Origin: Octopus sinensis
Taxonomy: Eukaryota
Reading direction: 5' to 3'
Assembly (NCBI RefSeq): GCF_006345805.1
Contig: NC_043010.1
Span: forward strand, 11,904,001-11,968,000
DNA length: 64,000 nt
Shown here: piece after piece, positions 5,300 through 60,025 of the stretch
Layout of the letters: each line of letters starts with the position of its first letter
How positions within the stretch are numbered: position 1 is the first letter of the stretch
Position numbers and translations under genes: made by a program
The notes under the pieces: generated by a model
The model's input: the letters and a program-made list of their open reading frames with translations, nothing else
Database searches by the model: none
Told to the model about the DNA's origin: nothing

Positions 5300-5870
5300 T
5301 AGTCACCTTCCTTTTCTCTATTTTCCTAAATGACATGTTCACCACACACAACTCTTTCTCATCACAAAACTCCAACAGCATCCATCCTTCTAAATTTCTC
5401 TCCCTAATTCCGTTTCCCCTATGCACACCCTCAAAGCCCTGGATCCATTTCCCAGCATTTTCATTAAAATCACCCAAGGCCCAAATCAGTTCATCTACCT
5501 TTTTGTAAATCATCAAAGAACCACCCTTTCTCAGCGATCCCTCTTCCACGTTGCAGGCCACACCCATAAATGACCCTCACCAATTCTTCCTCAAATGCTA
5601 ACACTACTGTCACCACTGTCACTCCTGACCTCCACCACCTTCTCACAGATTTTTTCCTTCACCAAAACTCCCACTCCTCCAGGCCCAACCACCACAACTT
5701 GTACCTTCTTCCCTTGAAACCCCCACAAATCTAGTAACCTGGCCCCTCCACCTAGCCTCCTGCACACAGCACACATCCACCTTCCTCTTCCTCAATTCAT
5801 CACATACCCCAGTTCCCTTTCCATGCAGACTGCCCACATTCCAACTTCTCAACCTCACCCCAAGTTTCTC
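5300..5870 (-). mobile_element. RTE-clade LINE, AP-endonuclease region, degenerate
   Basis: Frames give LRSWNVGSLHGK...VDVCCVQEARWRG, GVGVLVKEK and GDFNENAGK...HRGNGIRERNLEGWMLLEFCDEKELCVVN, typical of the RTE endonuclease. Confidence 0.85.
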
Positions 5871-8536: not shown

Positions 8537-8950
8537 GATGGCGATCTGGCAGAAACGTTAGCACGCCGGGCGAAATGCTTAGCGGTATTTCGTCTGCAGC
8601 TACGTTCCCAGTTCAAATTCCGCCAAGGTCGACTTTACCTTTCATCCTTTCAGCATCGATTAAGCAAGTACCAGTTATGCACTGGGGTTGATATAATCGA
8701 CTTAATCCATTTATCTGCCCTTGTTTGTCCCTTCTGTGTTCAGCCACTTGTGGGTAGTAAAGAAATAGGTATTTCGTCTGCAGCTACGTTCTGAGTTCAA
8801 ATTCTGCCGAGGTCGACTTTGCCCTTCATCCTTTCGGGGTCGATAAATTAAGTACCAGTTATGCACTGGGGTCGATATAATCGACTTAATCCGTTTGTCT
8901 GTCCTTGTTTGTTCCCTCTATGTTTAGCCTCTTGTAGGCAGTAATGAAAT
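8537..8950 (+). mobile_element. SINE family E, head + two tandem bodies
   Basis: Junction AAAGAAATAGG|TATTTCGTCTG near 8768; 17-bp TSD TAGAAATAAGAGCTAAA at 8511-8527 and 8951-8967. Confidence 0.9.
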
Positions 8951-18281: not shown

Positions 18282-18326
18282 TTCACTGATCATATATACA
18301 ATTACCATTTTAGAATATATGTTACT

Positions 18327-20569
18327 TATTTCTTTATTGCCCACAAGGGGCTAAACACAGAGGAAACCAACAAGGACAGACAAAAGGATTAAGTCGATTA
18401 TATCGACCCCAGTGCGTAACTGGTACTTAATTTATTGACCTCGAAAGGATGAAAGGCAAAGTCGACCTCGGCGGAATTTGAACTCACAATGTAATGGCAG
18501 ACAAAATACCTATTTCTTTACTACCCACAAGGGGCTAAACACAGAGAGGACAAACAAGGGCAGACAACCGGATTAAGTCGATTATATCGACCCCTGTGCA
18601 TAACTAGTACTTATTTAATCGACCCCGAAAGGATAAAAGGCAAAGTCAACCTCGGCAGAATTCAAACTCAGAATGTAATGGCAGACAAAATACCTATTTC
18701 TTTACTACCCACAAGGGCTTAAACACAGAGAGGACAAACAAGGACAGACAAACGGATTAAGTCGATTATATCGACCCCAGTGCATAACTAGTACTTATTT
18801 AATCGACCTCGAAAGGATGAAAGGCAAAGTCGACCTCGGCGGAAATCGAACTCAGAAAGTAATGGCAGACAAAATACCTATTTCTTTACTAACCACAAGG
18901 GGTTAAACACAGAGAGGACAAACAAGGACAGACAAACGGATTAAGTCGATTATATCAACCCCAGTGCATAACTAGTACTTATTTAATCGACCTCGAAAGG
19001 ATGAAAGGCAAAGTCGACCTCGGCGGAAATCGAACTCAGAATGTAATGGCAGACAAAATACCTATTTCTTTACTACCCACAAGGGGTTAAACACAGAGAG
19101 GACAAACAAGGACAGACAAATGGATTAAGTCGATTATATCGACCCCAGTGCATAACTAGTACTTAATTTATCGACCTCAAAAGGATGAAAGGCAAAGTCG
19201 ACCTCGGCAGAATTCAACTCAGAATGTAATGGCAACAAAATACCTATTTCTTTACTAACCACAAGGGGTTAACACAGAGAGGACAAACAAGGACAGACAA
19301 ACGGATTAATCGATTATATCGACCCCAGTGCATAACTAGTACTTCATTTATTGACCTCGAAAGGATGAAAGGCAAAGTCGACCTCGGCGGAATTCGAACT
19401 CACAATGTAATGGCAGACAAAATACCTATTTCTTTACTACCCACAAGGGGCTAAACACAGAGAGGACAAACAAGGGCAGACAACCGGATTAAGTCGATTA
19501 TATCGACCCCAGTGCATAACTAGTACTTATTTAATCGACCTCGAAAGGATGAAAGGCAAAGTCGACCTCGGCGGAAATCGAACTCAGAATGTAATGGCAG
19601 ACAAAATACCTATTTCTTTACTACCCACAAGGGGTTAAACACAGAGAGGACAAACAAGGACAGACAAACGGATTAAGTCGATTATATCGACCCCAGTGCA
19701 TAACTAGTACTTAATTTATCGACCTCAAAAGGATGAAAGGCAAAGTCGACCTCGGCAGAATTCAAACTCAGAATGTAATGGCAAACAAAATACCTATTTC
19801 TTTACTAACCACAAGGGGTTAAACACAGAGAGGACAAACAAGGACAGACAAACGGATTAAATCGATTATATCGACCCCAGTGCATAACTAGTACTTAATT
19901 TATTGACCTCGAAAGGATGAAAGGCAAAGTCGACCTCGGCGGAATTCGAACTCACAATGTAATGGCAGACAAAATACCTATTTCTTTACTACCCACAAGG
20001 GGCTAAACACAGAGAGGACAAACAAGGGCAGACAACCGGATTAAGTCGATTATATCGACCCCAGTGCATAACTAGTACTTATTTAATCGACCCCGAAAGG
20101 ATGAAAGGCAAAGTCAACCTCGGCAGAATTCAAACTCAGAATGTAATGGCAAACAAAATACCTATTTCTTTACTACCCACAAGGGGCTAAACACAGAGAG
20201 GACAAACAAGGACAGACAAACGGATTAAGTCGATTATATCGACCCCAGTGCATAACTAGTACTTATTTAATCGACCTCGAAAGGATGAAAGGCAAAGTCG
20301 ACCTCGGCGGAAATCGAACTCAGAATGTAATGGCAGACGAAATACCTATTTCTTTACTACCCACAAGGGGTTAAACACAGAGAGGACAAACGGATGAAGT
20401 CGATTAAATCGACCCCAGTGTGTAACTGGTACTTATCTAATCGACCCTGAAAGGAAGAAAGGCAAAGTCGACCTCGGCGGAATTTGAACTCTGAACATAA
20501 TGGCAGACAAAACACCGCTAAGCATTTCGCCCACCATGCAAATGATTCTGCAGATTGCTGCCATTTATA
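18327..20569 (-). repeat. Tandem array of SINE E: one head plus 12 body units of ~184 bp
   Basis: Unit starts at ~18325, 18509, 18693, 18877, 19061, 19243, 19425, 19609, 19793, 19977, 20161, 20345; head ends ~20562; 17-bp TSD TTAGAATATATGTTACT at 18310-18326 and 20570-20586. Confidence 0.95.
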
Positions 20570-27756: not shown

Positions 27757-28084
27757 CTGTAACCCTTCAATGAGATGTAATGAATTAACTTGGAGAAATT
27801 ATCTGATCCCTGAACTCTACACCCCATTGAATAACTTCATTCTGCAACTCTTTGGAGCCCCGTTTCAACCATCTGTGATCATAACTTATTTAGGTACTTC
27901 TTGGAAAATGGATTTCAGGTGGCAGAGAGTAATACAGCCTGCAGACACAGGTGGCTAGTTGTGATATATGTAGACTCCTGCCAGACAAATAAGCAACCCC
28001 TAAGGAAACAATACTAATGCAAGACATGGCTTGTAAGACGGTGACATTTGTTTATGACTTTATCTAAACAAGGAGACACAAACA

Positions 28085-28440
28085 CATGCACCATGCACAC
28101 ACACACACACATACACTCCTACACATACACTCACACACACACACACATATGCATACATACATACATACATACATACATACACACATACATACATACATGC
28201 ATACATACATACATGCATACATACACACATGCATACATACATACATACACACATACATACACACACACATACATACACACATACACACATTCATACATGC
28301 ATACATGCATACATACATACATTCCTGCATACATACATACATACATACATTCATACATACTTACATACATACACACATACATACATACACACACACATAC
28401 ACACACACATACATACACACATACACACATTCATACATAC

Positions 28441-28471
<31 letters not shown>

Positions 28472-28735
28472 CATACATACATGCATACATACATACATAC
28501 ACACACACATACACACACACATACACACATACATACATACATACATACATACATACAAACATAAAAACATACATACTTACATACAAACATACATACATAT
28601 ATACATACATACATACATACATACATACATACATGCATACATACATACATGCATACATACATACATACATACATACATACATACATGCATACATACATAC
28701 ATGCATACATACATACATACATACATACATACATA
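28085..28735. repeat. (CATA)n/(CA)n compound microsatellite
   Basis: Directly visible; source of the HTYI/MYVC pseudo-ORFs. Confidence 0.95.
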
Positions 28736-28868
28736 AATCGTTAGCCACTACACATTCTTTATTTTCTCTACTTGTTTCTTTCTGTGTTCCTTCCCGAGCG
28801 TTATACTAATACATCTGTTTGTTGTCTACACCACCTGTCTTTGTCTTTTGTTTTTTCGTGAATTCTCC
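28736..28868 (+). mobile_element. Element G1 copy lacking the hammerhead segment
   Basis: Aligns to 26966-27144 with ~45 bp missing between TTCCTTC and CCGAGCG. Confidence 0.75.
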
Positions 28869-30650: not shown

Positions 30651-30807
30651 CTGGTATTTCTTCATAATGTTTTGTTGCATCATCTATTCGCCATCCATTT
30701 TCGCTGTCTCTTCGACTGCCTCCTCTTCTGTTAATTGTAGCTGTGCTATGAATTTCTCTAGCACCATCTTGATCAGAGGCTTGGGCTATATGTGGTGGTC
30801 TGCTCTC
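30651..30807 (-). CDS. Predicted second coding exon of the protocadherin (cytoplasmic tail: ESRPPHIAQ...WRIDDATKHYEEIP)
   Basis: Acceptor TTGTTTCCACAG|GAG and donor CCAG|GTATGT; 157 nt, open frame; phase 0 start matches the phase 0 end of the large exon; phase 1 end. Confidence 0.7.
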
Positions 30808-31144
30808 CTGTGGAAACAATATCTTTCTCATGTAAATTATGCAAGTTGGAATCATAAAGAGATGACAACATCTGAAGGTTATTAAAGTAGTGATAACGAA
30901 AGTAGCAAGCTGGTAGAATCATTAACACACCAGATGAAATGCTTTGCAGGATTTCTACCAGCTTGGTGTTCTGAGTTCAAATATCACCAAGGTAGACTTT
31001 GTCTTTTATCCTTTCAGGGTCGATAAAATATGTAGCAGTCAAGTACCGGGGTCAATGCAATTGATTTTCCCCCACCCCACAAAATATCCATGATGGAAGA
31101 TCAAGATAAATGGGGAAACCATGGAAACAGTCTTGGAACATCCT

Positions 31145-31915: not shown

Positions 31916-31947
31916 ACTAATTATTCTACTGCATATATTTCACTAAG

Positions 31948-32177
31948 ACGGCTAGTTGGCAGAAACGTTAGCACGCCAGGCGAAATGCTTTGTGGTATCT
32001 TGTCCACTGCTGTGTTCTGAGTTCAAATTCCGCTGAGGTCGACTTTGCCTTTCATCCTTTCGGGGTCAATAAATTAAGTACTAGTTATGCACTGGAGTCG
32101 ATGTAATCGACTTAATCCCTTTGTCTGTCCTTGTTTGTCCCCTCTGTTTTTAGCCCCTTGTGGGTAGTAAAGAAATA
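31948..32177 (+). mobile_element. SINE family E, monomer
   Basis: 13-bp TSD ATATATTTCACTA at 31933-31945 and 32177-32189. Confidence 0.9.
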
Positions 32178-36147: not shown

Positions 36148-36782
36148 CAGGAGATCAATGAAGAACTGGAATACAGAATTAACATATTATGTGGAGAATT
36201 TTGGCAATGGTCAATGTTAGAAGAGGAATATTTCAGTGAGATAGTCTGTCACCTTGTGCCTAACATTAGAAATAATTTTTTTTAGAAACAACAGGCCAAA
36301 ATCCAAGGTCCCCCAAAAATTGGTGATGGCCAGTATTATGAAAATAAAAAGGGATTATACAATGAAGTTCCTGAGTTTGAATAAATTGATATTTCATGAG
36401 AAAGAAGAGGAATCTATAACACTTTGAGAGTTTATACTCTTCCTGTGGTGTAGCTAAATAGTTAAAATGTGTACTACCCAGGGTGACCTTTGGTGTTTTC
36501 CCCATCCCACCCCCACTTTCTCAGGCCACAAAGCCTGTATGGGCTCAAAAGTATTACATCCATAAAAACATCACCCAGGGTGAATTGCTTCCCATTTTGC
36601 ATCACCACTAGCTGTGCTGCTGTCCTCTTCATCTAAACAAGAATAACTTAGCCTTTTAGTTCAAAAGAATCCCTATTTCAGATGAAAGGATGGTTCCACA
36701 GTATCCAATTCCTCTTTTTTCCTGGCATCTGAAGTTACCCAAATTCACAAACTTCCTTATATTTACCAATGATAACTTACCT

Positions 36783-37018
36783 ATTTCTTTATTACCCACA
36801 AGGGGCTAAACATAGAGGGGACAAACAAGGACAGACATAGGTATTAAGTCGATTACATCGACCCCAGTGCGTAACTGGTACTTAATCTATTGACCCCGAA
36901 AGGATGAAAGGTAAAGTCGACCTCGGCGGAATTTGAACTCACAACGTAACGGCAGACGAAATACAGCTAAGCATTTCACCTGACGTGCTAACGTTTCTGC
37001 CAGCTCTCTGCCTTTATA
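36783..37018 (-). mobile_element. SINE family E inserted at the protocadherin splice donor
   Basis: Full monomer; 18-bp TSD ACCAAT(G/A)ATAACTTACCT at 36765-36782 and 37019-37036. Confidence 0.9.
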
Positions 37019-37034
37019 ACCAATAATAACTTAC

Positions 37035-39410
37035 CTGTGTTGGTACCGGATGTCTTCGAGTAAGAGTGGCTATCGTCCAGTCACTAGGTAATTCAACCAC
37101 TGAGTAAAACGGTGCTGCTGCTGTATTATTTTCATTGGTACTTTCTTCTGGGACTCTTAGTAATGTTGTAGGGCTAGTAGCTTGATATATTAAATGCTTT
37201 GCATCAGGGTTAGTCTCATTCAACTGGTTCAGTCTTTGATCTCGAACCCTATTTGAGACATTTATATATCGAACTATACACACTGTAGCAGACACTACGA
37301 GAATTATTGAGAATATTACAGCTACAACTATTATTATTATTGATAAGTTTACATCAGATACTTTTTTGGACTGAGCCTGAACATTTGTCATTAATAAGGA
37401 GCTGTTACTGACACTCAATGTCAAGGATAAAGTAGTCATTGCCGACAGAGATGGTATGCCGCTGTCATTTACTGCTACAACAAGTCTGTATGTTGCTGCA
37501 TCATTTGGATAAACTTTACGTGAGAAGAGCAATACTCCAGAGTAAGGTTTCACCATGAACAACTGCTGTTCATTTCCTTCGAGTATTTGGTAATGAAGGA
37601 AAGCATTGCTTCCACTGTCTTTATCAGAAGCCTTTAGAACTGTGATTTCATTATCACTTTGCGGATGGTAGTGAACATCGAAGCTGAAAGGGTTCACTGT
37701 GGGAAAGTTAAAATACGGGGCATTATCATTTTTGTCCATTACTTCAACAATAACATCTACCGTGTCATTCAGTGGTGGGGTACCATTGTCTTTGGCAAGT
37801 ACATAGAATTGATAATGTTTTTGTTTTTCATAATCCAATAACTTTGTTGTTGTAATGAACCCAGCATTATTAATCTGAAACACTGGATCCTGTTTATTCT
37901 TACTCAGAATAGAGAACTCCAGTTGACCCCCAGGTCCCACATCTAAGTCAGTGGCAGTGACAAAGCCAACAGGATAGTTAGCTTTTTCGTTCTCATACAC
38001 CAGGAATTTATAAGCTTTTTTACTGAATTGTGGTCGGACATCATTAATGTCTTTTACTTGGATAAAGAAATGATTTTTTACCATCACCGAAAATAGGCCT
38101 TTATCCCGGCAGAAAACATCGATTTTATAATGATCAGTTGTCTCTCTATCAACAGGCTGTTTAATCACAATTTTATACTCTTTGGGGTTTAATTTTCTAA
38201 GTTCAAAATGGTTATGTTTCAGATGGCATTCAACATCTCCATTCTGTCCATCATCTTTATCAACAACTATAACATAAGCAATGAAACTTCCTACAGGAAT
38301 CCCTTCAGAAATGGTAACTGTATTCTTTATAAAGCTAGGAGCAAAACTAATGAGTATTTTTGGTGGAGTGTTGTATTGGTTCATAAACTTTACATTGACA
38401 ATAGCACTAGAAACTAATGGAATTTCTCCATTATCTTCGGCTGCAATAATCAATTTATAGTGTTCTTTTTTCTCTGAAGTGAAATTTTCATTCAGAAAAA
38501 TATCTCCTGTTTCATGATTAATTTTAAATAACTTTACATCAGGCTTCAACTTGTAAGTAATTTTGCCATTCCTTCCGGCATCTTTATCCGTTGCATGCAA
38601 TGTTATAATGGGCAATGAGGGCTTATGGGTATTTTTTACAGAAACATTATAGATTCCTTTTGAGAAATATGGCCAGTTGTCATTGACATCAATTACTGAT
38701 ATTTTAACGATTAAAACAGATTTCTTGGGTGGTGTACCACCATCGGTTGCTACAACTTCCAGCGTGTAAGATTCTTGAGTTTCTCTATCTAGTTCCCCTT
38801 CCAAGACAATTTCTATTATGTCAGCACCAACTTCCCTCTTTTGCACGAAGAGACCAAAATGAAGATCAGATTGTTTTCTTAATGTATATGTCAGTTGATT
38901 ATTTGGGCTTTCAATATCTCCGTCTATTGCATTAGGAATTGCTATTTTTCTTCCCTTTCCATCAGTCTCGGTAAAATTTAGATTCGTTTCATTACTTGGA
39001 AATGTTGGCTGATGATCATTAACATCTTTAATTAATACTTTAATCTTTAAGATTTTCTTAAATGATTCCCCTTGCTGAACTGCTACATTTAACAGTTGAA
39101 AACATTCTGTATTCTTGCTACAGAGATTCTCAGCATCAAGAGATGCAGTGGTATAGAGTTTCCCTGCTCTGGTTATATTGAATAGCGATGGAGTATCTAC
39201 CATAGTCTGTTGTAACTGGTTGAATGCAATTGAACCTAGGTTTTCAGTATCAAGTTCATTGGCAATATTAGAATCTGCTGCAATATCTCCAACGTAACTC
39301 GCAGAAGGTTTTTCTTCTTCAATGCTGTATGTAAGATCTATAGTTGCAGAACAACACCAAATAAATATCAAGAATATCTCAAAGGCAAACAACCAGATTT
39401 TACTAGACAT
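37035..39410 (-). CDS. Protocadherin, large exon: signal peptide, six cadherin repeats, TM, proximal cytoplasmic tail (792 codons)
   Basis: Intact ORF. The ORF-track start at 39428 is TTG; the first ATG is 39410 (MSSKIWLFAFEIFLIFIWCCSA). EC1 has a C-X5-C motif; linkers DVNDHQP, DVNDNWP, DINDVRP, DKNDNAP; TM LSIIIIVVAVIFSIILVVSATVCIV; donor CAG|GTAAGT at 37035/37034. No orthology-level symbol assigned. Confidence 0.95.
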
Positions 39411-39429
39411 AACTATTGGAATTACCAAA

Positions 39430-39462
39430 GTTTACCTGAAACAAAAGAGAAAAAAATAATTT
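39430..39462 (-). promoter_or_regulatory. Splice acceptor of the large protocadherin exon (implies an upstream non-coding exon)
   Basis: Minus strand TTTTTTCTCTTTTGTTTCAG|GTAAAC, 25 nt upstream of the ATG. Confidence 0.75.
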
Positions 39463-41145: not shown

Positions 41146-41439
41146 CTGTTATTAATCTCAATAATTCTCCATAAATTATGGAAAACAAATATATTGTGTC
41201 AATGGCATATGATTGGATTAATTTAAATATTATTTTGAAATGGTATAAAAAGAAGAAGACGAGTAAGAAGATTAAGGATATTAACAGAACTAAAGAGGTT
41301 TCAGAATAATGGTGAAGCAGCTTTGAATTTATACTGCGTCAGTGATTTTATTCTACAGTAGAATTAAAGAAAATTTTCTTTCAACAATGAAGTCATTACA
41401 TGCTTTCTATACAGAGATATCCAAAGTTCCAGTCACAAT

Positions 41440-41807
41440 TTTGCATACACACACACATACACACACACGTGCATGTGTGTGTGTGTATGTGTGTGTGTGG
41501 ATAAATATACATACAAACATACATGCAAACATACATACATATATATACACTGATATCACGCACAATCATATTCTGTTAAACCACACACACACCACACATG
41601 CATGCACACACATGAACGCACACACACATACACACGTACACACGCACATACACACATACACACACACAGAGGTAGATTAACACTATATTTTCTCTTTATT
41701 CCTTATGAGGATTCTGAGAGATTATAACCAATATGTCTTTATATATATATGTGTGTATATATATATATAAAAATATATATATATATATATATATATATGT
41801 GTATGTA

Positions 41808-41866
<59 letters not shown>

Positions 41867-41941
41867 GTGTGTGTGTGTGTATATATATGTATATATATAT
41901 GTGTGTGTATAATATATATTTGTGTATATATATTATTATAT

Positions 41942-41985
<44 letters not shown>

Positions 41986-42213
41986 CACACATACATATAT
42001 ATGTATGTATGTATGTACGTATGTATGTATATTTGTATGTATGTATGTATGTATGTATGTTTGTATGTATGTATGTATGTATGTATATTTCATTGTTATA
42101 ATTCATTGACAAAAGCAAGAGACGTAAGTGTTGGATGATAATTGGAAAGAATATGAAGGAGAAAGAATTGGCTGCATCAAAAAATTACTCGGTGCTATCT
42201 AAATAATTATATG

Positions 42214-47698: not shown

Positions 47699-47819
47699 CT
47701 CTATCTATCTATTTATCTGTCTAGCTATCTATCCCCAATCTTAGAAGGTATCAAGCAAGTATTTTAGTGAATAGTGGTTGCTTTAGTTTATATCAGAGAA
47801 TTTTTTCTTTCTTTCTTTC

Positions 47820-48016
47820 ACTGTATGTATATATGTGTGTATGTATGTATGCATGCTTGTATGTATGTATGTAAGTATGTGTATGTATTTATAACTGTGT
47901 ATGTATCTATGTGTTGGTATGTATGCATGTATGCTTGTATGAATGTGTATATGTATGTCAATATTCAGTTTTATGTAAGTCTTCTCATGCATATAGTTAC
48001 ATATCTAGACATGCTC

Positions 48017-48047
<31 letters not shown>

Positions 48048-48681
48048 TGTATGCATGCATGTATGTATGTATGCATGCATGTATGGATGTATGCATGCAT
48101 GCATGTATGTATGTATGTATGCATGCATGCATGTATGTATGTATGTATGTATGTATGTATGTATGTATGTATGTATGCATGCATGCATGCATGTATGTAT
48201 GTATGCATACATGTATGTATGTATGTATGCATGTATGTATGCATGTATGTAAAGTTAATCCAACATGAAAGCACAAAAAAACACAACAACGCGAGGACGT
48301 GGAACAAATATAGTATTATTGGACGCTCAGGAAAGAAGGAAACAAGGAGGGTTTAACCTTTTGAGCAGAGCTCTTCGTCGGAAACATAGGAGAAGGAAAG
48401 ATCCAGAGAAGGGAAGACAGAGGAAAAAAAAATCGCCAACGGTATACACGCGGTCACATTTTGAATGTATGTATGTATATAAGTATGTATGTATGTATGC
48501 ATGCATGTATGCATGCATGTATGTATGCATGTATGCATGTATGTATGCGTGTATGTATGTATGTGTGTATGTATGTATTTATGTATGTGTGTGTGTGTGT
48601 ATGTATGTATATGTATGTGTATGTGTGTATGCATGTATGTATGCATGCATGCATGCATGTGTGCGTGCGTGTGTATGTATG

Positions 48682-48714
<33 letters not shown>

Positions 48715-52423: not shown

Positions 52424-52611
52424 ATATGTGTATATATATGATTGATTGATTGATTCTAGTTTCAGCTTATGAGCTGAGGCCATGCTGGGGCACCGCCATT
52501 TATTATGTGTGAAGGCTGATGTAGCATCAATTATACAACTTTTATGAAACTGCTATCAACAAATAGAATAAAAATCTATTCTCTCATTTTACTTCTCTCA
52601 TTTAATTAATT

Positions 52612-52645
52612 TATATGTATGTATGTATGTATGTATGTTTGTATG

Positions 52646-52679
<34 letters not shown>

Positions 52680-52861
52680 TGTATGTATGTATGTATGTAT
52701 GTATGTATGCATGCATGCATGCATGTATGTATGTATGTATGTATGTATGTATGTATATATGTATGTATGTATGTTTGTATGTATATATGTATGTATGTAT
52801 GTAAGTATGTATGTATGTATGTATGTATGTATGTATGTATATATGTATGTATGTTTGTATG

Positions 52862-52895
<34 letters not shown>

Positions 52896-53069
52896 TGTAT
52901 GTATGTATGTATGTATGCATGCATGCATGCATGTATGTATGTATGTATGTATGTATGTATGTATGTATATATGTATGTATGTATGTTTGTATGTATATAT
53001 GTATGTATGTATGTAAGTATGTATGTATGTATGTATGTATGTATGTATATATGTATGTATGTTTGTATG

Positions 53070-53100
<31 letters not shown>

Positions 53101-53395
53101 ATGTATGTATGTATGTATGTATGTAAGTATGTATGTATGATGTATGTATGTATGTATATATGTATGTATGTATGTTGTATGTATGTATGTCTGTATGTAT
53201 GTATGTGTGTATGTATGTAAGTATGTATGTATGTTGTATGTATGTATGTATGTATGGTATGTATGTATGAAGTATGTATGTATGTATGAATGTATGTATG
53301 TACGTACGTATGTATGTATGTATGTATGTATGAATGTATGTATGTATGTATGTATGTATGTATGTATGTATGTATGTATGTATGTATGTATGTAT
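52612..53395. repeat. (TATG)n compound microsatellite, ~780 bp
   Basis: Directly visible. Confidence 0.95.
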
Positions 53396-54597
53396 AAATA
53401 CAATGATGGATGATGTATATGCATGTGTGTATGTGTGTGTTCATGCATACTAACCTAGAAAAATTTACTGGATGGTTATGGCTGAAATGTCTTTGGCCAT
53501 AAGTTTGTTCAAAGTTAATATAAGGCTAAACAACATAAACAACAAATAGAATTCCTCCATAATACTTCCTATAAAAACCCTTCTTTGAATATTTTATATA
53601 TCCTTATGGCATACTGTGAATATCCACACTGTTCCAGAAGACACTGAGTGTACATGTTTACTAGATTTGCCTTCAGCATGAATAGGCTGATGTTGAATTA
53701 AAAATACCTACAAGAAACTGGATTTCCTCAGAAACAAAGATCAGAAGTAAAGTAAAATAACGCGGAATACATCACATTTAATCAATAGGTGAAAGAAAAC
53801 GAAACACAGCCATGTTTTAAATTATAAAACAAATATGAAAAATAGCTGTTAGATTCTAAAAAAAACCCCCAAAAAGTGAGGGAATTAAAAGTAGAATATG
53901 AATTAAAACAACAACAACACATTAATGCTCATTAAATTTAAGGTTATAGTGAAATAAAACAGCAAAACATGAAATTAAGAAAGAAAATAAATGTAAAATA
54001 GTGAAGGGAGCCCAGAACACGCATTTAATGAATGTAAATCCATAACCTAAAGGCAGACAGCAGAAAGATATTTTTAGTGTAAACATGCGTTAAAAGAAAA
54101 GTTTTTCAATTAAAAGTTTCTATATAAAAGAGCAGTAGCCAATTTCCAAATAGACATGGGAAAATGAACAACGAAAAAAAATGGTAAGCCAATTAAATGA
54201 ACGCTTGATACAAATGTTACACTTTTGAAAAAAATTTTTAAACAAATTTTTATTTTTATTAACTTATTTCTTTATTTGAAGCTAAAAATGATTTAAAGCT
54301 CGCCTGATAGGAACAGAGCTACAGTGAACTACAGAGACAAATTTGGATCCAAATGGAAAATATAATTAGACATCGTGGTTAACAGCTGAAAATATGGTAT
54401 ATGAAAGTATTCCAAGGTGAGGTGGAATACATCTAAAGCTAGTTAACTGTACATAAATCATTAGGGAACAGAAAAATAGAAGATAATATCACAAAATGTC
54501 TACCGTGATCTAATATGCATATTTGATATACAAATGGTCAAATGGTGAAACATACAGACCAAAGCTAGCCTTAGTTACATGTGTATATATATATACA

Positions 54598-58949: not shown

Positions 58950-59955
58950 CGAACAATAAAATAACTACCTAAGTATTGGGCTCATACAATCAACTGGAAT
59001 AATCAAGTGGAATTCTTGATGGCAGTACCCAAATATGGCCACACCTCAATGACTGAAACCATTAGATGAGAAATAAATGAGGAATAGTATGATAAATTAA
59101 TAGACAGTCAAGATGGGGATAGTAACTTCTGTATAATGCAAACATTGCTACAGAAATTCTATAGTATGATACTAGTCCAATTATATGTTCCTGAATAAAT
59201 AAATATATTTTATAGTATGGTGATATTGATTTATCATTTTGATAGAAATAGAAGGTATAGTCAATTGAAATGGCTTCAGCACATGATTGACACTTATTTT
59301 ATTGAACTCAAGAGGATAAAAGTGCAACGCTAAGCTCAATAGGACTGGAAATCAGAACATAAAGGTATGTTGCTAAATACAGAAAAGGGATTTACTTTGG
59401 TACCTGGTAACATCATTGCTGTTATATTAATGCTTTGTGAGAATGTAAATATGTACTAATATGTAGTTAAGAAATTTGTTTCATAGTCAGGTTGTGGTTC
59501 TACATTCAACCTTACTGTGTGGCATGATGGGTACTTTATGGATACAAAACCATTGGTCACTCTATCTCTAGCCATATAATTCATTTCCTATATATATATA
59601 TATATATGTGTGTGTGTATTCATGAGTACAAATAGATATATATGTCTTGCAAACAACTTGCACTTGCAAGTGCTACCAGTTAAAAGCTCCGTATACCGGA
59701 AGCTAGCAAGTGTATGGGGTCATCAGGAGGGAATGCGTGCCATTTCGGGGCCTACCTCTCGACGGCATCAATGCGCACCGGCTCCCCTCACATGTATATC
59801 AATATAAACAAACTAACGTTTGTTTTTTTATAAATGTCAAAATGTGTATTGTATTTTACACATAAGATTTCAATTTTTTGAACGCAGAAATGCCATTAGA
59901 ACAGTGGAAATAGTGGGTAAATTAACCTTACAAAGCATAAAAATTTGTCAATAAA

Positions 59956-60025
59956 CAGCCATGGGACTTGAACTCACAACCTTGAAAGACTCTGGCTGAG
60001 TGCTTTACCATTAAGCTAAACTGCC
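59956..60025 (-). pseudogene. tRNA-like sequence (SINE head or tRNA pseudogene)
   Basis: Recognisable D arm (GCTTAATGGTAAAGC) and T arm (GTGAGTTCAAGTCCCAT); the anticodon arm does not fold properly. Confidence 0.55.

What the first reader, a model, noticed from the sequence alone, without database searches (positions are those of the whole stretch)
36765..37036. SINE insertion duplicated the protocadherin 5' splice site, creating a competing distal donor
Seen: the 18-bp TSD contains AG|GTAAGT. The gene now has the native donor (CAG|GTAAGT, 37035/37034) and a second consensus donor (TAG|GTAAGT, 36781/36780) at the SINE's 3' end. Use of the distal site would exonise the SINE and read ...PTQVSYYWL-stop (TAA 37016-14), 233 nt upstream of the junction. 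Inference: the result is either NMD or a receptor lacking the HYEEIP exon, i.e. a TE-made splicing switch. The SINE is sense-oriented and has Pol III boxes.
Basis: partly seen in the sequence, partly recalled or inferred. Interest (0 to 1): 0.8.

Follow-up and report, generated by a model that had tools for sequence, protein, structure and literature searches.

The report
SINE insertion duplicated an octopus splice donor
In the East Asian common octopus, a short mobile element landed 17 bases into the first intron of a protocadherin gene and copied the exon-intron junction, leaving two near-identical splice donors 254 bases apart; this is real and lineage-specific, but nothing yet shows that the second donor is used.

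Summary
The window is Octopus sinensis CM016872.1:11,904,001-11,968,000. On the minus strand, a 792-codon protocadherin exon ends at CAG|GTAAGT (37035/37034). A 231-bp sense-oriented SINE (37013-36783) follows. It is flanked by AGGTAAGTTATTATTGGT (37036-37019) and AGGTAAGTTATCATTGGT (36782-36765), which creates a second donor, TAG|GTAAGT (36781/36780).

O. bimaculoides and a third, unidentified octopus have the empty site, with one donor and no SINE. The insertion and its target-site duplication are therefore proven and derived.

One refinement: the family's own 3' tail can end in ...GAAATAGG. The first 3-4 bases of the "18-bp TSD" may therefore come from the SINE, giving a TSD of 14-18 bp.

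The "splicing switch" is untested. Every annotated orthologue uses the native donor, including O. sinensis's own model and a transcriptome-derived O. vulgaris sequence. Exons 2-3 evolve no faster than exon 1. No RNA data could be reached.

The Pol III boxes are weak: only a B-box-like motif was found. My best reading is a largely neutral intronic insertion with a silent or minor, unproductive second donor. This is a new member of a known kind, of moderate interest.

The parts
37035..39410 (-). Protocadherin coding exon 1: ATG at 39410-39408, 792 codons, with signal peptide, cadherin repeats, TM segment and proximal cytoplasmic tail.
   Evidence: Translation. Pfam Cadherin 8.5e-75 in 5 stretches. 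100% identical to O. sinensis XP_029645230 (P0122).
37029..37037 (-). Native 5' splice site CAG|GTAAGT (exon ends at 37035).
   Evidence: Sequence. The junction PTQ|ESRPP is present in all orthologous proteins. Predicted U1 duplex -13.4 kcal/mol.
37019..37036 (-). Upstream copy of the target-site duplication, AGGTAAGTTATTATTGGT. It carries one derived C>T change at intron position +10.
   Evidence: The ancestral state (C) is seen in O. bimaculoides L006.
37014..37018 (-). 5-nt junction filler TATAA between the TSD and the SINE 5' end. It supplies the TAA stop (37016-37014) of the read-through frame.
36783..37013 (-). SINE body, 231 bp, in the same orientation as the gene. It is 94.4% identical to the family consensus and has 9 private substitutions.
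   Evidence: BLAST and alignment against other copies.
36928..36938 (-). B-box-like motif GTTCAAATTCC inside the SINE.
   Evidence: Motif scan, coordinates. No tRNA model match.
36788..36793 (-). AATAAA hexamer near the SINE 3' end (family consensus AGTAAA), 7 nt upstream of the second donor. It is a possible intronic poly(A) signal.
36765..36782 (-). Downstream copy of the target-site duplication, AGGTAAGTTATCATTGGT, identical to the ancestral site. The first 3-4 nt may instead be SINE tail.
36775..36783 (-). Second (SINE-end) 5' splice-site sequence TAG|GTAAGT, with the junction at 36781/36780.
   Evidence: Sequence. Predicted U1 duplex -11.3 kcal/mol.
30651..30807 (-). Coding exon 2 (ESRPP...KHYEEIP, 52 codons plus 1 nt), with acceptor ttccacag|G and donor CAG|gtatgt. 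Exon 3 lies about 48.6 kb further downstream, outside the window.
   Evidence: 97.5% identical to O. bimaculoides, against 91% for the flanking intron.

Best explanation
After the O. sinensis lineage split from the O. bimaculoides lineage, a member of a young octopus SINE subfamily retrotransposed in sense orientation into intron 1 of this protocadherin gene. The presumed mechanism is LINE-mediated target-primed reverse transcription.

The staggered target cut spanned the last exon bases and the first 16 intron bases, so repair duplicated the 5' splice site. The SINE's own ...AAAUAGG(U) tail overlaps the AG|GT of the junction. The new site TAG|GTAAGT is therefore a composite of SINE tail and duplicated intron.

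These structural steps are shown by the sequence comparisons. The functional outcome that follows is inference. The intact upstream donor still makes the functional mRNA (exon 1 to 30807). The downstream copy is a silent pseudo-site or a minor donor. Its product carries a stop 233 nt before the junction and a frameshift, so it would be unproductive and probably degraded. On this reading the element is essentially a neutral intronic insertion, not an evolved switch.
For: - Empty sites in two other octopus taxa, and a filled site in O. sinensis.
- TSDs of 12-13 bp at other copies, also validated by O. bimaculoides empty sites.
- Young copies (87-97% identity) occur only in the O. sinensis sequence. 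O. bimaculoides L006 has only 74-82% relatives. This matches the reported post-bimaculoides SINE expansion (PMC7656900).
- Copy c40580 ends GAAATAGG, with the AGG absent from its target. Five of 13 independent 3' ends read GAAAT|AGGT.
- Every annotated orthologue has the canonical junction: O. sinensis, O. vulgaris (including the transcriptome-derived QBA31140), O. bimaculoides and Argonauta hians.
- Exons 2-3 are intact. Their protein divergence is 2.38% against 2.40% for exon 1. Exon 2 is 97.5% identical at the DNA level, against 91% for the intron.
- The focal SINE has 3.9% private substitutions, so the gene has coexisted with the insertion for a substantial time.
- The native donor pairs slightly better with U1: -13.4 against -11.3 kcal/mol.
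- Human F7 IVS7 gives a precedent: identical duplicated donors stay silent and only the most upstream one is used (PMC1557585).
- Three G-runs lie in the SINE downstream of the native donor. In vertebrates such runs favour an upstream donor; this point is from general knowledge.
Against: - No RNA-level data for O. sinensis could be reached, so use of the second donor is simply unmeasured.
- In vitro, substrates with two consensus donors 174 nt apart splice almost wholly from the intron-proximal one, which here would be the SINE-end site (PMC3413131).
- Both sites have a perfect GTAAGT, and both are about equally accessible in predicted structure.
- Gene models and transcriptome assemblies under-report NMD isoforms.
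- It is not known whether O. vulgaris, the source of the transcript evidence, carries the SINE.
Confidence: 0.55

Rival explanations
1. One reading: the duplicated donor competes effectively with the native one. A sizeable or regulated share of transcripts would exonise the 254-nt TSD-plus-SINE segment, lowering protein output through NMD or yielding a receptor without the 84 C-terminal residues, which include the YEEIP motif. The insertion would then act as a splicing switch.
For: - Both donors are consensus GTAAGT with 8-9 U1 base pairs.
- At 254 nt apart, both can be occupied at once, and in vitro the intron-proximal site then wins (PMC3413131).
- The PTC geometry fits the 50-55-nt NMD rule.
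- The lost tail carries a motif found in 56 of 120 cephalopod protocadherins, so its loss would matter functionally.
- SINE fragments are reported to be frequent in octopus brain transcripts (PMC9115989).
Against: - No transcript or protein record of this isoform exists.
- All gene models are canonical.
- There is no sign of relaxed or altered constraint on exons 2-3.
- The insertion is a single lineage-specific event with no sequence hint of selection on it.
- The truncated protein is already available from simple intron read-through in the ancestral allele (VSYHW*), so the SINE adds no new coding capacity.
- EJC-type NMD has not been established in cephalopods (general knowledge).
Confidence: 0.25
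2. Intronic polyadenylation: the SINE's AATAAA (36793-36788) and the GU-rich stretch about 40 nt downstream act as a premature poly(A) site. This would yield an unspliced short mRNA that ends in the intron and encodes ...PTQVSYYWL*, escaping NMD.
For: - This copy has the canonical AATAAA where the family consensus has AGTAAA.
- GTTTGTG/TTTGGG lies downstream.
- SINEs are known to import poly(A) signals in dog 3'UTRs (PMC11699766; title and abstract only).
Against: - Two strong U1-binding sites flank the hexamer, one of them only 7 nt downstream. In vertebrates U1 bound nearby suppresses cleavage/polyadenylation (general knowledge).
- No such product is on record.
- This reading was not tested at the RNA level.
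Confidence: 0.08
3. The downstream donor has taken over, following the intron-proximal rule. The O. sinensis gene would then mostly yield NMD substrates or a truncated protein, and the locus would be on its way to losing exons 2-3.
For: In vitro, two consensus donors favour the intron-proximal one (PMC3413131).
Against: - Exons 2 and 3 are intact, with good splice sites and ordinary divergence, despite 3.9% private divergence in the SINE.
- O. sinensis gene models are canonical.
- The near-identical O. vulgaris gene yields a canonical transcript.
Confidence: 0.07
4. The SINE at this site is an assembly artefact, or a rare allele of the sequenced individual, rather than a fixed feature of the species.
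For: The window and L007 are the same assembly (0 mismatches over 42,410 nt), so there is no independent confirmation. O. sinensis heterozygosity is reported at about 1.1% (PMC9795677).
Against: The insertion has clean TSDs with one post-insertion mismatch and 9 private substitutions. That indicates an old, genuine retrotransposition, not a mis-join. Many similar insertions distinguish O. sinensis from O. bimaculoides in the same region.
Confidence: 0.04

Closest known systems
Human F7 intron 7 37-bp minisatellite that repeats the exon 7 donor (Borensztajn et al. 2006, PMC1557585)
   Same: The authentic donor is followed by downstream copies of the same 5' splice-site sequence, created by duplication across the exon-intron boundary. 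This is a natural test of tandem-donor choice.
   Different: There the duplication is a 37-bp tandem repeat with 6-9 copies, and experiments show that only the first is used. Here a SINE's target-site duplication made a single extra copy 254 nt away, and its usage is unmeasured.
Canine merle PMEL SINE insertion (review PMC7349775)
   Same: A SINE inserted at an intron-exon boundary, and its 15-bp target-site duplication includes the original splice site. Splice choice between the original site and a SINE-associated site decides whether the normal protein is made.
   Different: Merle affects the 3' splice site, the SINE is antisense, and the outcome depends on poly(A)-tail length with a proven phenotype. 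Here the 5' splice site is affected, the SINE is sense-oriented and has no poly(A) tail, and there are no phenotype or RNA data.
TE exonisation and AS-NMD (for example Alu exonisation in primates)
   Same: Part of a retroelement could become exonic through a splice site at its edge. The outcome would be a premature stop and probable decay.
   Different: Classical Alu exonisation uses sites that arise by mutation inside antisense elements and creates cassette exons. Here the donor was ready-made at insertion (SINE tail plus duplicated intron), and it would extend exon 1 rather than create a new exon.
Octopus tRNA-derived / CORE-type SINEs (OK, OR1, OR2; Ohshima & Okada 1994, cited in PMC4758252)
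   Same: An abundant short non-autonomous retroelement of octopus genomes with no poly(A) tail, TSDs and 5'-truncated copies. It expanded after the split from O. bimaculoides, as reported for O. vulgaris SINEs (PMC7656900).
   Different: I had no reference sequences, so identity with any named family is untested. The head is not recognised as a tRNA by Rfam or ARAGORN.

Membership tests
SINE inserted by target-primed reverse transcription | Short, non-coding, dispersed multi-copy family | tested here: met
   231-bp consensus. The core motif occurs 18 times in 64 kb, against 0 expected. BLAST finds 25 HSPs in the window and more in L007.
SINE inserted by target-primed reverse transcription | Flanking target-site duplication | tested here: met
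   18 bp (17/18 identical) at the focal copy. Other copies have 13, 12 and at least 9 bp.
SINE inserted by target-primed reverse transcription | Orthologous empty site in related taxa | tested here: met
   O. bimaculoides L006 and Logan contigs L001-L005 have a single copy of the target and no SINE. The same holds for copies c40580 and c31946.
SINE inserted by target-primed reverse transcription | 5'-truncated copies retain the 3' end (this defines the orientation) | tested here: met
   Partial copies covering consensus positions 114-231, 119-231 and 189-230 all keep the AAAGAAAT end.
SINE inserted by target-primed reverse transcription | Internal Pol III promoter (A and B boxes) or a head derived from a small RNA | tested here: inconclusive
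   Only a B-box-like GTTCAAATTCC was found. The best A-box candidates need 3 mismatches. Neither Rfam nor ARAGORN calls a tRNA in the focal copy, the youngest copy or the consensus.
SINE inserted by target-primed reverse transcription | 3' tail shared with a partner LINE | not tested
   No LINE reference was available. The Argonauta element shares the 3' 47 nt, which suggests a conserved 3' module.
TE-created alternative 5' splice site / exonisation | Consensus donor at the element's edge, in the sense of the host gene | tested here: met
   TAG|GTAAGT at 36781/36780. U1 duplex -11.3 kcal/mol, against -13.4 for the native site.
TE-created alternative 5' splice site / exonisation | Transcripts that actually use the site | not testable with these tools
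   No product ending ...VSYYWL is on record. ORF look-ups across the junction found nothing. Homology searches with C-terminal queries were uninformative. The metagenome scan found no octopus DNA.
NMD-coupled unproductive splicing | Premature stop more than 50-55 nt upstream of a downstream exon junction | tested here: met
   TAA at 37016-37014 lies 233 nt before 36781. Two downstream junctions follow. The extension is 254 nt (frameshift) with 5 in-frame stops.
NMD-coupled unproductive splicing | Isoform stabilised when NMD is blocked | not testable with these tools
   This needs an experiment.
Silent duplicated donors (F7 IVS7 type) | Only the most upstream of the identical donors is used | tested here: inconclusive
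   All annotated and transcriptome-derived products use the upstream donor. Absence of the other junction was not measured.

The most novel reading that the evidence does not exclude
The SINE family's 3' tail (...AAAUAGGU) matches the AG|GU core of 5' splice sites. Microhomology-guided priming could therefore make exon-intron junctions preferred targets, and every such sense insertion would create a ready-made tandem donor. In this neuronal adhesion-receptor family, the extra donor would be used in a regulated way to shut off or truncate the receptor by removing the conserved YEEIP tail. That would be a TE-driven route to isoform control in octopus protocadherins, which lack the vertebrate variable/constant-exon system.
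Probability: 0.08. Interest if true: 0.65.

Novelty: new member of a known kind. Interest (0 to 1): 0.35.

Why it matters
If the second donor is used, this would be a clean natural example of a transposon delivering a fully formed competing splice site at the moment of insertion. It sits in a gene family thought to underlie octopus neural wiring, and the ancestral (empty) allele is preserved in sister species for comparison.

Even if the donor is silent, the locus is a useful in-vivo test outside vertebrates. It sets two rules for tandem strong donors against each other: upstream-first scanning and the intron-proximal preference.

As it stands, it is one lineage-specific intronic SINE among thousands, with no evidence of any effect.

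Tried and rejected
**Attempts to reach RNA-level evidence**
- The exact-product look-up of the read-through ORF (...PTQVSYYWL, 798 aa) found nothing.
- Look-ups of two small ORFs that span the SINE/flank junction found nothing.
- Two homology searches with C-terminal queries behaved erratically. They missed even the identical annotated protein and gave no transcript fragments.

**Contigs that looked like transcripts but are not**
- I first took Logan contigs L001-L005 for read-through transcripts.
- They run colinear with the genome through the acceptor 25 nt upstream of the ATG, end in microsatellites on both sides, and come in two haplotypes.
- I therefore treat them as genomic DNA and use them only as an empty-site allele.

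**O. vulgaris DNA**
- It could not be fetched. The gene range is 198 kb and the second isoform is not on record.
- Whether the SINE is shared with O. vulgaris is therefore unknown.

**Widening the SINE sample**
- A metagenome scan for the SINE 3' end found no octopus DNA.
- A further O. sinensis locus (L009) added no 3' ends.
- The tail statistics therefore rest on 13 independent copies.

**Other checks that did not help**
- Rfam at relaxed threshold over the whole window gave mostly microsatellite-driven false miRNA hits.
- tRNA ancestry of the SINE head was not detectable.
- Predicted RNA structure does not distinguish the two donors.
- A literature search on 'SINE' with word-start matching was swamped by 'sinensis'.
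Full report
**1. What the window is**

The first 42,410 bases of the window are the exact reverse complement of locus L007 (0 mismatches). L007 was fetched from Octopus sinensis assembly GCA_006345805.1, chromosome record CM016872.1. The window therefore corresponds to CM016872.1:11,904,001-11,968,000.

**2. The gene**

The gene lies on the minus strand.
- Exon 1: an ORF from the ATG at 39410 to 37035 encodes 792 residues, with a signal peptide, cadherin repeats, a TM segment and about 100 cytoplasmic residues. Pfam gives Cadherin at 8.5e-75 in 5 stretches.
- Identity: the ORF is identical to the annotated O. sinensis protein XP_029645230 (P0122). It is 98% identical to O. bimaculoides XP_014768892 (P0001) and 80% identical to an Argonauta hians protein (P0002).
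- Junctions: all of these proteins, and two O. vulgaris entries, read ...RRHPVPTQ|ESRPPHIAQ...KHYEEIP|ALRFP...GTNL.
- Exon map: tblastn places the three coding exons as follows. Exon 1 ends at 37035. Exon 2 is 30807-30651, with acceptor ttccacag|G and donor CAG|gtatgt. Exon 3 lies about 48.6 kb further downstream, outside the window.
- Intron 1 length: 6.2 kb in O. sinensis, 2.7 kb in O. bimaculoides and 0.87 kb in Argonauta.

**3. The observation**

Reading the minus strand, the site has this order:

| Element | Sequence | Coordinates |
|---|---|---|
| Native donor | CAG\|GTAAGT | junction 37035/37034 |
| Upstream repeat | AGGTAAGTTATTATTGGT | 37036-37019 |
| Filler | TATAA | 37018-37014 |
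| SINE body | 231 bp | 37013-36783 |
| Downstream repeat | AGGTAAGTTATCATTGGT | 36782-36765 |
| Second donor | TAG\|GTAAGT | junction 36781/36780 |

In the exon-1 frame, the intron reads VSYYWL and then TAA at 37016-37014, which is 233 nt before 36781. The would-be exon extension is 254 nt, so it shifts the frame, and it holds five in-frame stops. Every number in the finding checks.

**4. It is a real insertion, and derived**

The orthologous site in O. bimaculoides (L006) reads CACAG|GTAAGTTATCATTGGTAAATGTAAGGAAG..., with one donor and no SINE. Five Logan contigs from a third, unidentified octopus (L001-L005) read CACAG|GTAAGTTACTATTGGTAAATTTAAGG.... Their exon is 94% identical to the window.

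Those contigs run colinear with the genome through an upstream acceptor, end in microsatellites and show two haplotypes. I therefore treat them as genomic DNA, not mRNA.

The downstream repeat in O. sinensis is identical to the ancestral sequence. The upstream repeat has one later C>T change at intron position +10.

The flanking intron is 91.0% identical between O. sinensis and O. bimaculoides. The focal SINE carries 9 private substitutions in 231 nt, or 3.9%. The insertion is therefore not recent and probably predates the O. sinensis/O. vulgaris split. That last point is inference, because O. vulgaris DNA could not be fetched.

**5. The element**

- Abundance: a 23-nt core motif occurs 18 times in the window, against 0 expected. 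BLAST finds full-length, dimeric, tandem and 5'-truncated copies.
- Orientation: truncated copies always keep the ...AAAGAAAT end. That fixes the orientation and confirms that the focal copy is in the gene's sense.
- Other TSDs: other copies have TSDs of 13, 12 and at least 9 bp. Two of these are validated by empty sites in O. bimaculoides.
- Age distribution: copies at 87-97% identity occur only in O. sinensis sequence, and O. bimaculoides L006 has only 74-82% relatives. This fits the reported SINE expansion after divergence from O. bimaculoides (PMC7656900).
- Pol III boxes: this claim is weak. There is a B-box-like GTTCAAATTCC (36938-36928), but no A box better than 3 mismatches. Neither Rfam nor ARAGORN calls a tRNA in the focal copy, the youngest copy or the consensus.

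**6. A refinement of the TSD**

The 3' end of the family is heterogeneous.
- Copy c31946 ends exactly at GAAAT, followed by its 13-bp TSD.
- Copy c40580 ends GAAATAGG, and the O. bimaculoides empty site shows that AGG was not in the target.
- Of 13 independent 3' ends, 5 read GAAAT|AGGT. These include the focal copy and its two closest relatives, which share the diagnostic ATACCTATG.
- In at least three of those five, (A)GGT is also present in the 5' flank.

The simplest reading is a microhomology between the SINE RNA tail ...AUAGG(U) and the target. At the focal site, AGG(T) could therefore come from either source, and the TSD is 14-18 bp. The second donor is thus a composite: positions -3 to about +2 can be supplied by the SINE, and +3 to +6 (AAGT) by the duplicated intron. 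With only 13 ends, I regard a true target preference for AG|GT junctions as an idea, not a result.

**7. Would the second donor be used?**

Both sites have GTAAGT. The predicted U1 5'-end duplex is -13.4 kcal/mol for the native site and -11.3 for the distal one, which has a U-G wobble at -3. Predicted local structure does not separate them.

Published rules conflict.
- In human F7 intron 7, identical duplicated donors stay silent and only the most upstream one is used (PMC1557585).
[quoted passage not shown] Here that would be the SINE-end site.

Three G-runs in the SINE would favour the upstream donor in vertebrates. That point is general knowledge, not tested here.

Indirect evidence favours continued use of the native donor.
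- The O. sinensis gene model is canonical.
- The O. vulgaris protein QBA31140 is also canonical. It differs from the O. sinensis protein at 1 of 876 residues and comes from a transcriptome assembly (PMC6339937).
- The 90%-identity cluster holds no truncated annotated isoform.
- O. sinensis/O. bimaculoides protein divergence is 2.40% in exon 1 and 2.38% in exons 2-3.

None of this measures the minor isoform.

**8. What would be lost**

Distal-donor use, plain intron retention and intronic polyadenylation would all give the same protein: exon 1 plus VSYYWL. The ancestral allele already stops after VSYHW. The product lacks 84 residues, including HYEEIP. A Y[ED]E[IVL][PH] motif sits near the C-terminus of 56 of the 120 cephalopod protocadherins retrieved, so the tail is probably functional. 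Its resemblance to the pYEEI SH2-binding motif is from memory only.

This SINE copy also has a canonical AATAAA (36793-36788) where the family consensus has AGTAAA, which gives a third possible route to a short mRNA.

**9. Verdict**

- The structure is proven: a lineage-specific, sense-oriented SINE whose insertion duplicated the 5' splice site.
- The most likely state, at confidence about 0.55, is that the native donor remains the working site. The copy would then be silent or a minor unproductive site.
- Splice sites caught inside a SINE's target-site duplication are known (merle PMEL, PMC7349775). Tandem duplicated donors are known too (F7). This is therefore a new member of a known kind.
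- Interest is moderate. It lies mainly in the locus being a clean natural experiment with the ancestral allele at hand.

Noticed in passing
window 18323-20516 (- strand); also 8540-8950: A 12-unit tandem array of 184-bp repeats, 92% matching, built from positions 49-231 of the same SINE joined head-to-tail through ...GAAATAG|GTATTT. A dimer of the same kind lies at 8540-8950, and others lie in L007 beyond the window. This SINE family evidently seeds satellite-like arrays.
   Followed up: partly
L008 (Argonauta hians) 5380-5700: The orthologous intron 1 of Argonauta carries an independent, sense-oriented element that starts about 30 nt after the donor. It shares the last 47 nt of the octopus SINE (81% identity, E 1e-7). 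The inserted block is flanked by CAACTTATTATTT direct repeats. This is a second insertion of a related element just inside the same intron.
   Followed up: partly
window 30651-30668 (end of exon 2) and proteins P0001-P0120: The HYEEIP at the exon 2/3 junction belongs to a Y[ED]E[IVL][PH] motif, most often QYEEIPA. It is present near the C-terminus of 56 of 120 cephalopod protocadherin hits, at a median of 46 residues from the end. It looks like a family-wide cytoplasmic signalling motif.
   Followed up: partly
window 37411-37415 and 39411-39435 (- strand): An O. vulgaris model (P0123, CAI9732495) joins an internal AGT|GTCAGT (GT at 37412-37411) to exon 2, which deletes the TM segment and proximal tail. 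It also uses a strong acceptor (tttgtttcag|G) 25 nt upstream of the ATG. Whether that isoform is real was not checked.
   Followed up: no
L004 and L005, position about 2462: One haplotype of the unidentified third octopus has CAA|GTAAGT instead of CAG|GTAAGT at this donor. The G>A change at position -1 is synonymous. The same haplotype has a 1-bp deletion 22 nt into the intron, so the donor itself is polymorphic there.
   Followed up: no
window 59953-60025 (- strand): There is an Rfam tRNA match at 30.5 bits, just above the gathering score of 29, which ARAGORN does not call. It is probably a tRNA pseudogene or the head of a different SINE.
   Followed up: no
window 30905-31067 (+ strand, antisense to the gene): An older relative of the SINE (75% identity) lies about 100 nt upstream of the exon 2 acceptor. 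A younger antisense copy at 31946-32176 is absent from O. bimaculoides. Much of the growth of intron 1 from 2.7 to 6.2 kb appears to be such insertions.
   Followed up: partly
window-wide, e.g. 28048-28809, 41400-42050, 47800-48700, 52600-53450: Long (TG/CA)n and (TA)n-type microsatellite tracts produce dozens of sub-threshold Rfam 'mir-297/mir-3149/mir-466' hits and spurious ORFs of 150-280 codons. These are composition artefacts, not genes.
   Followed up: no
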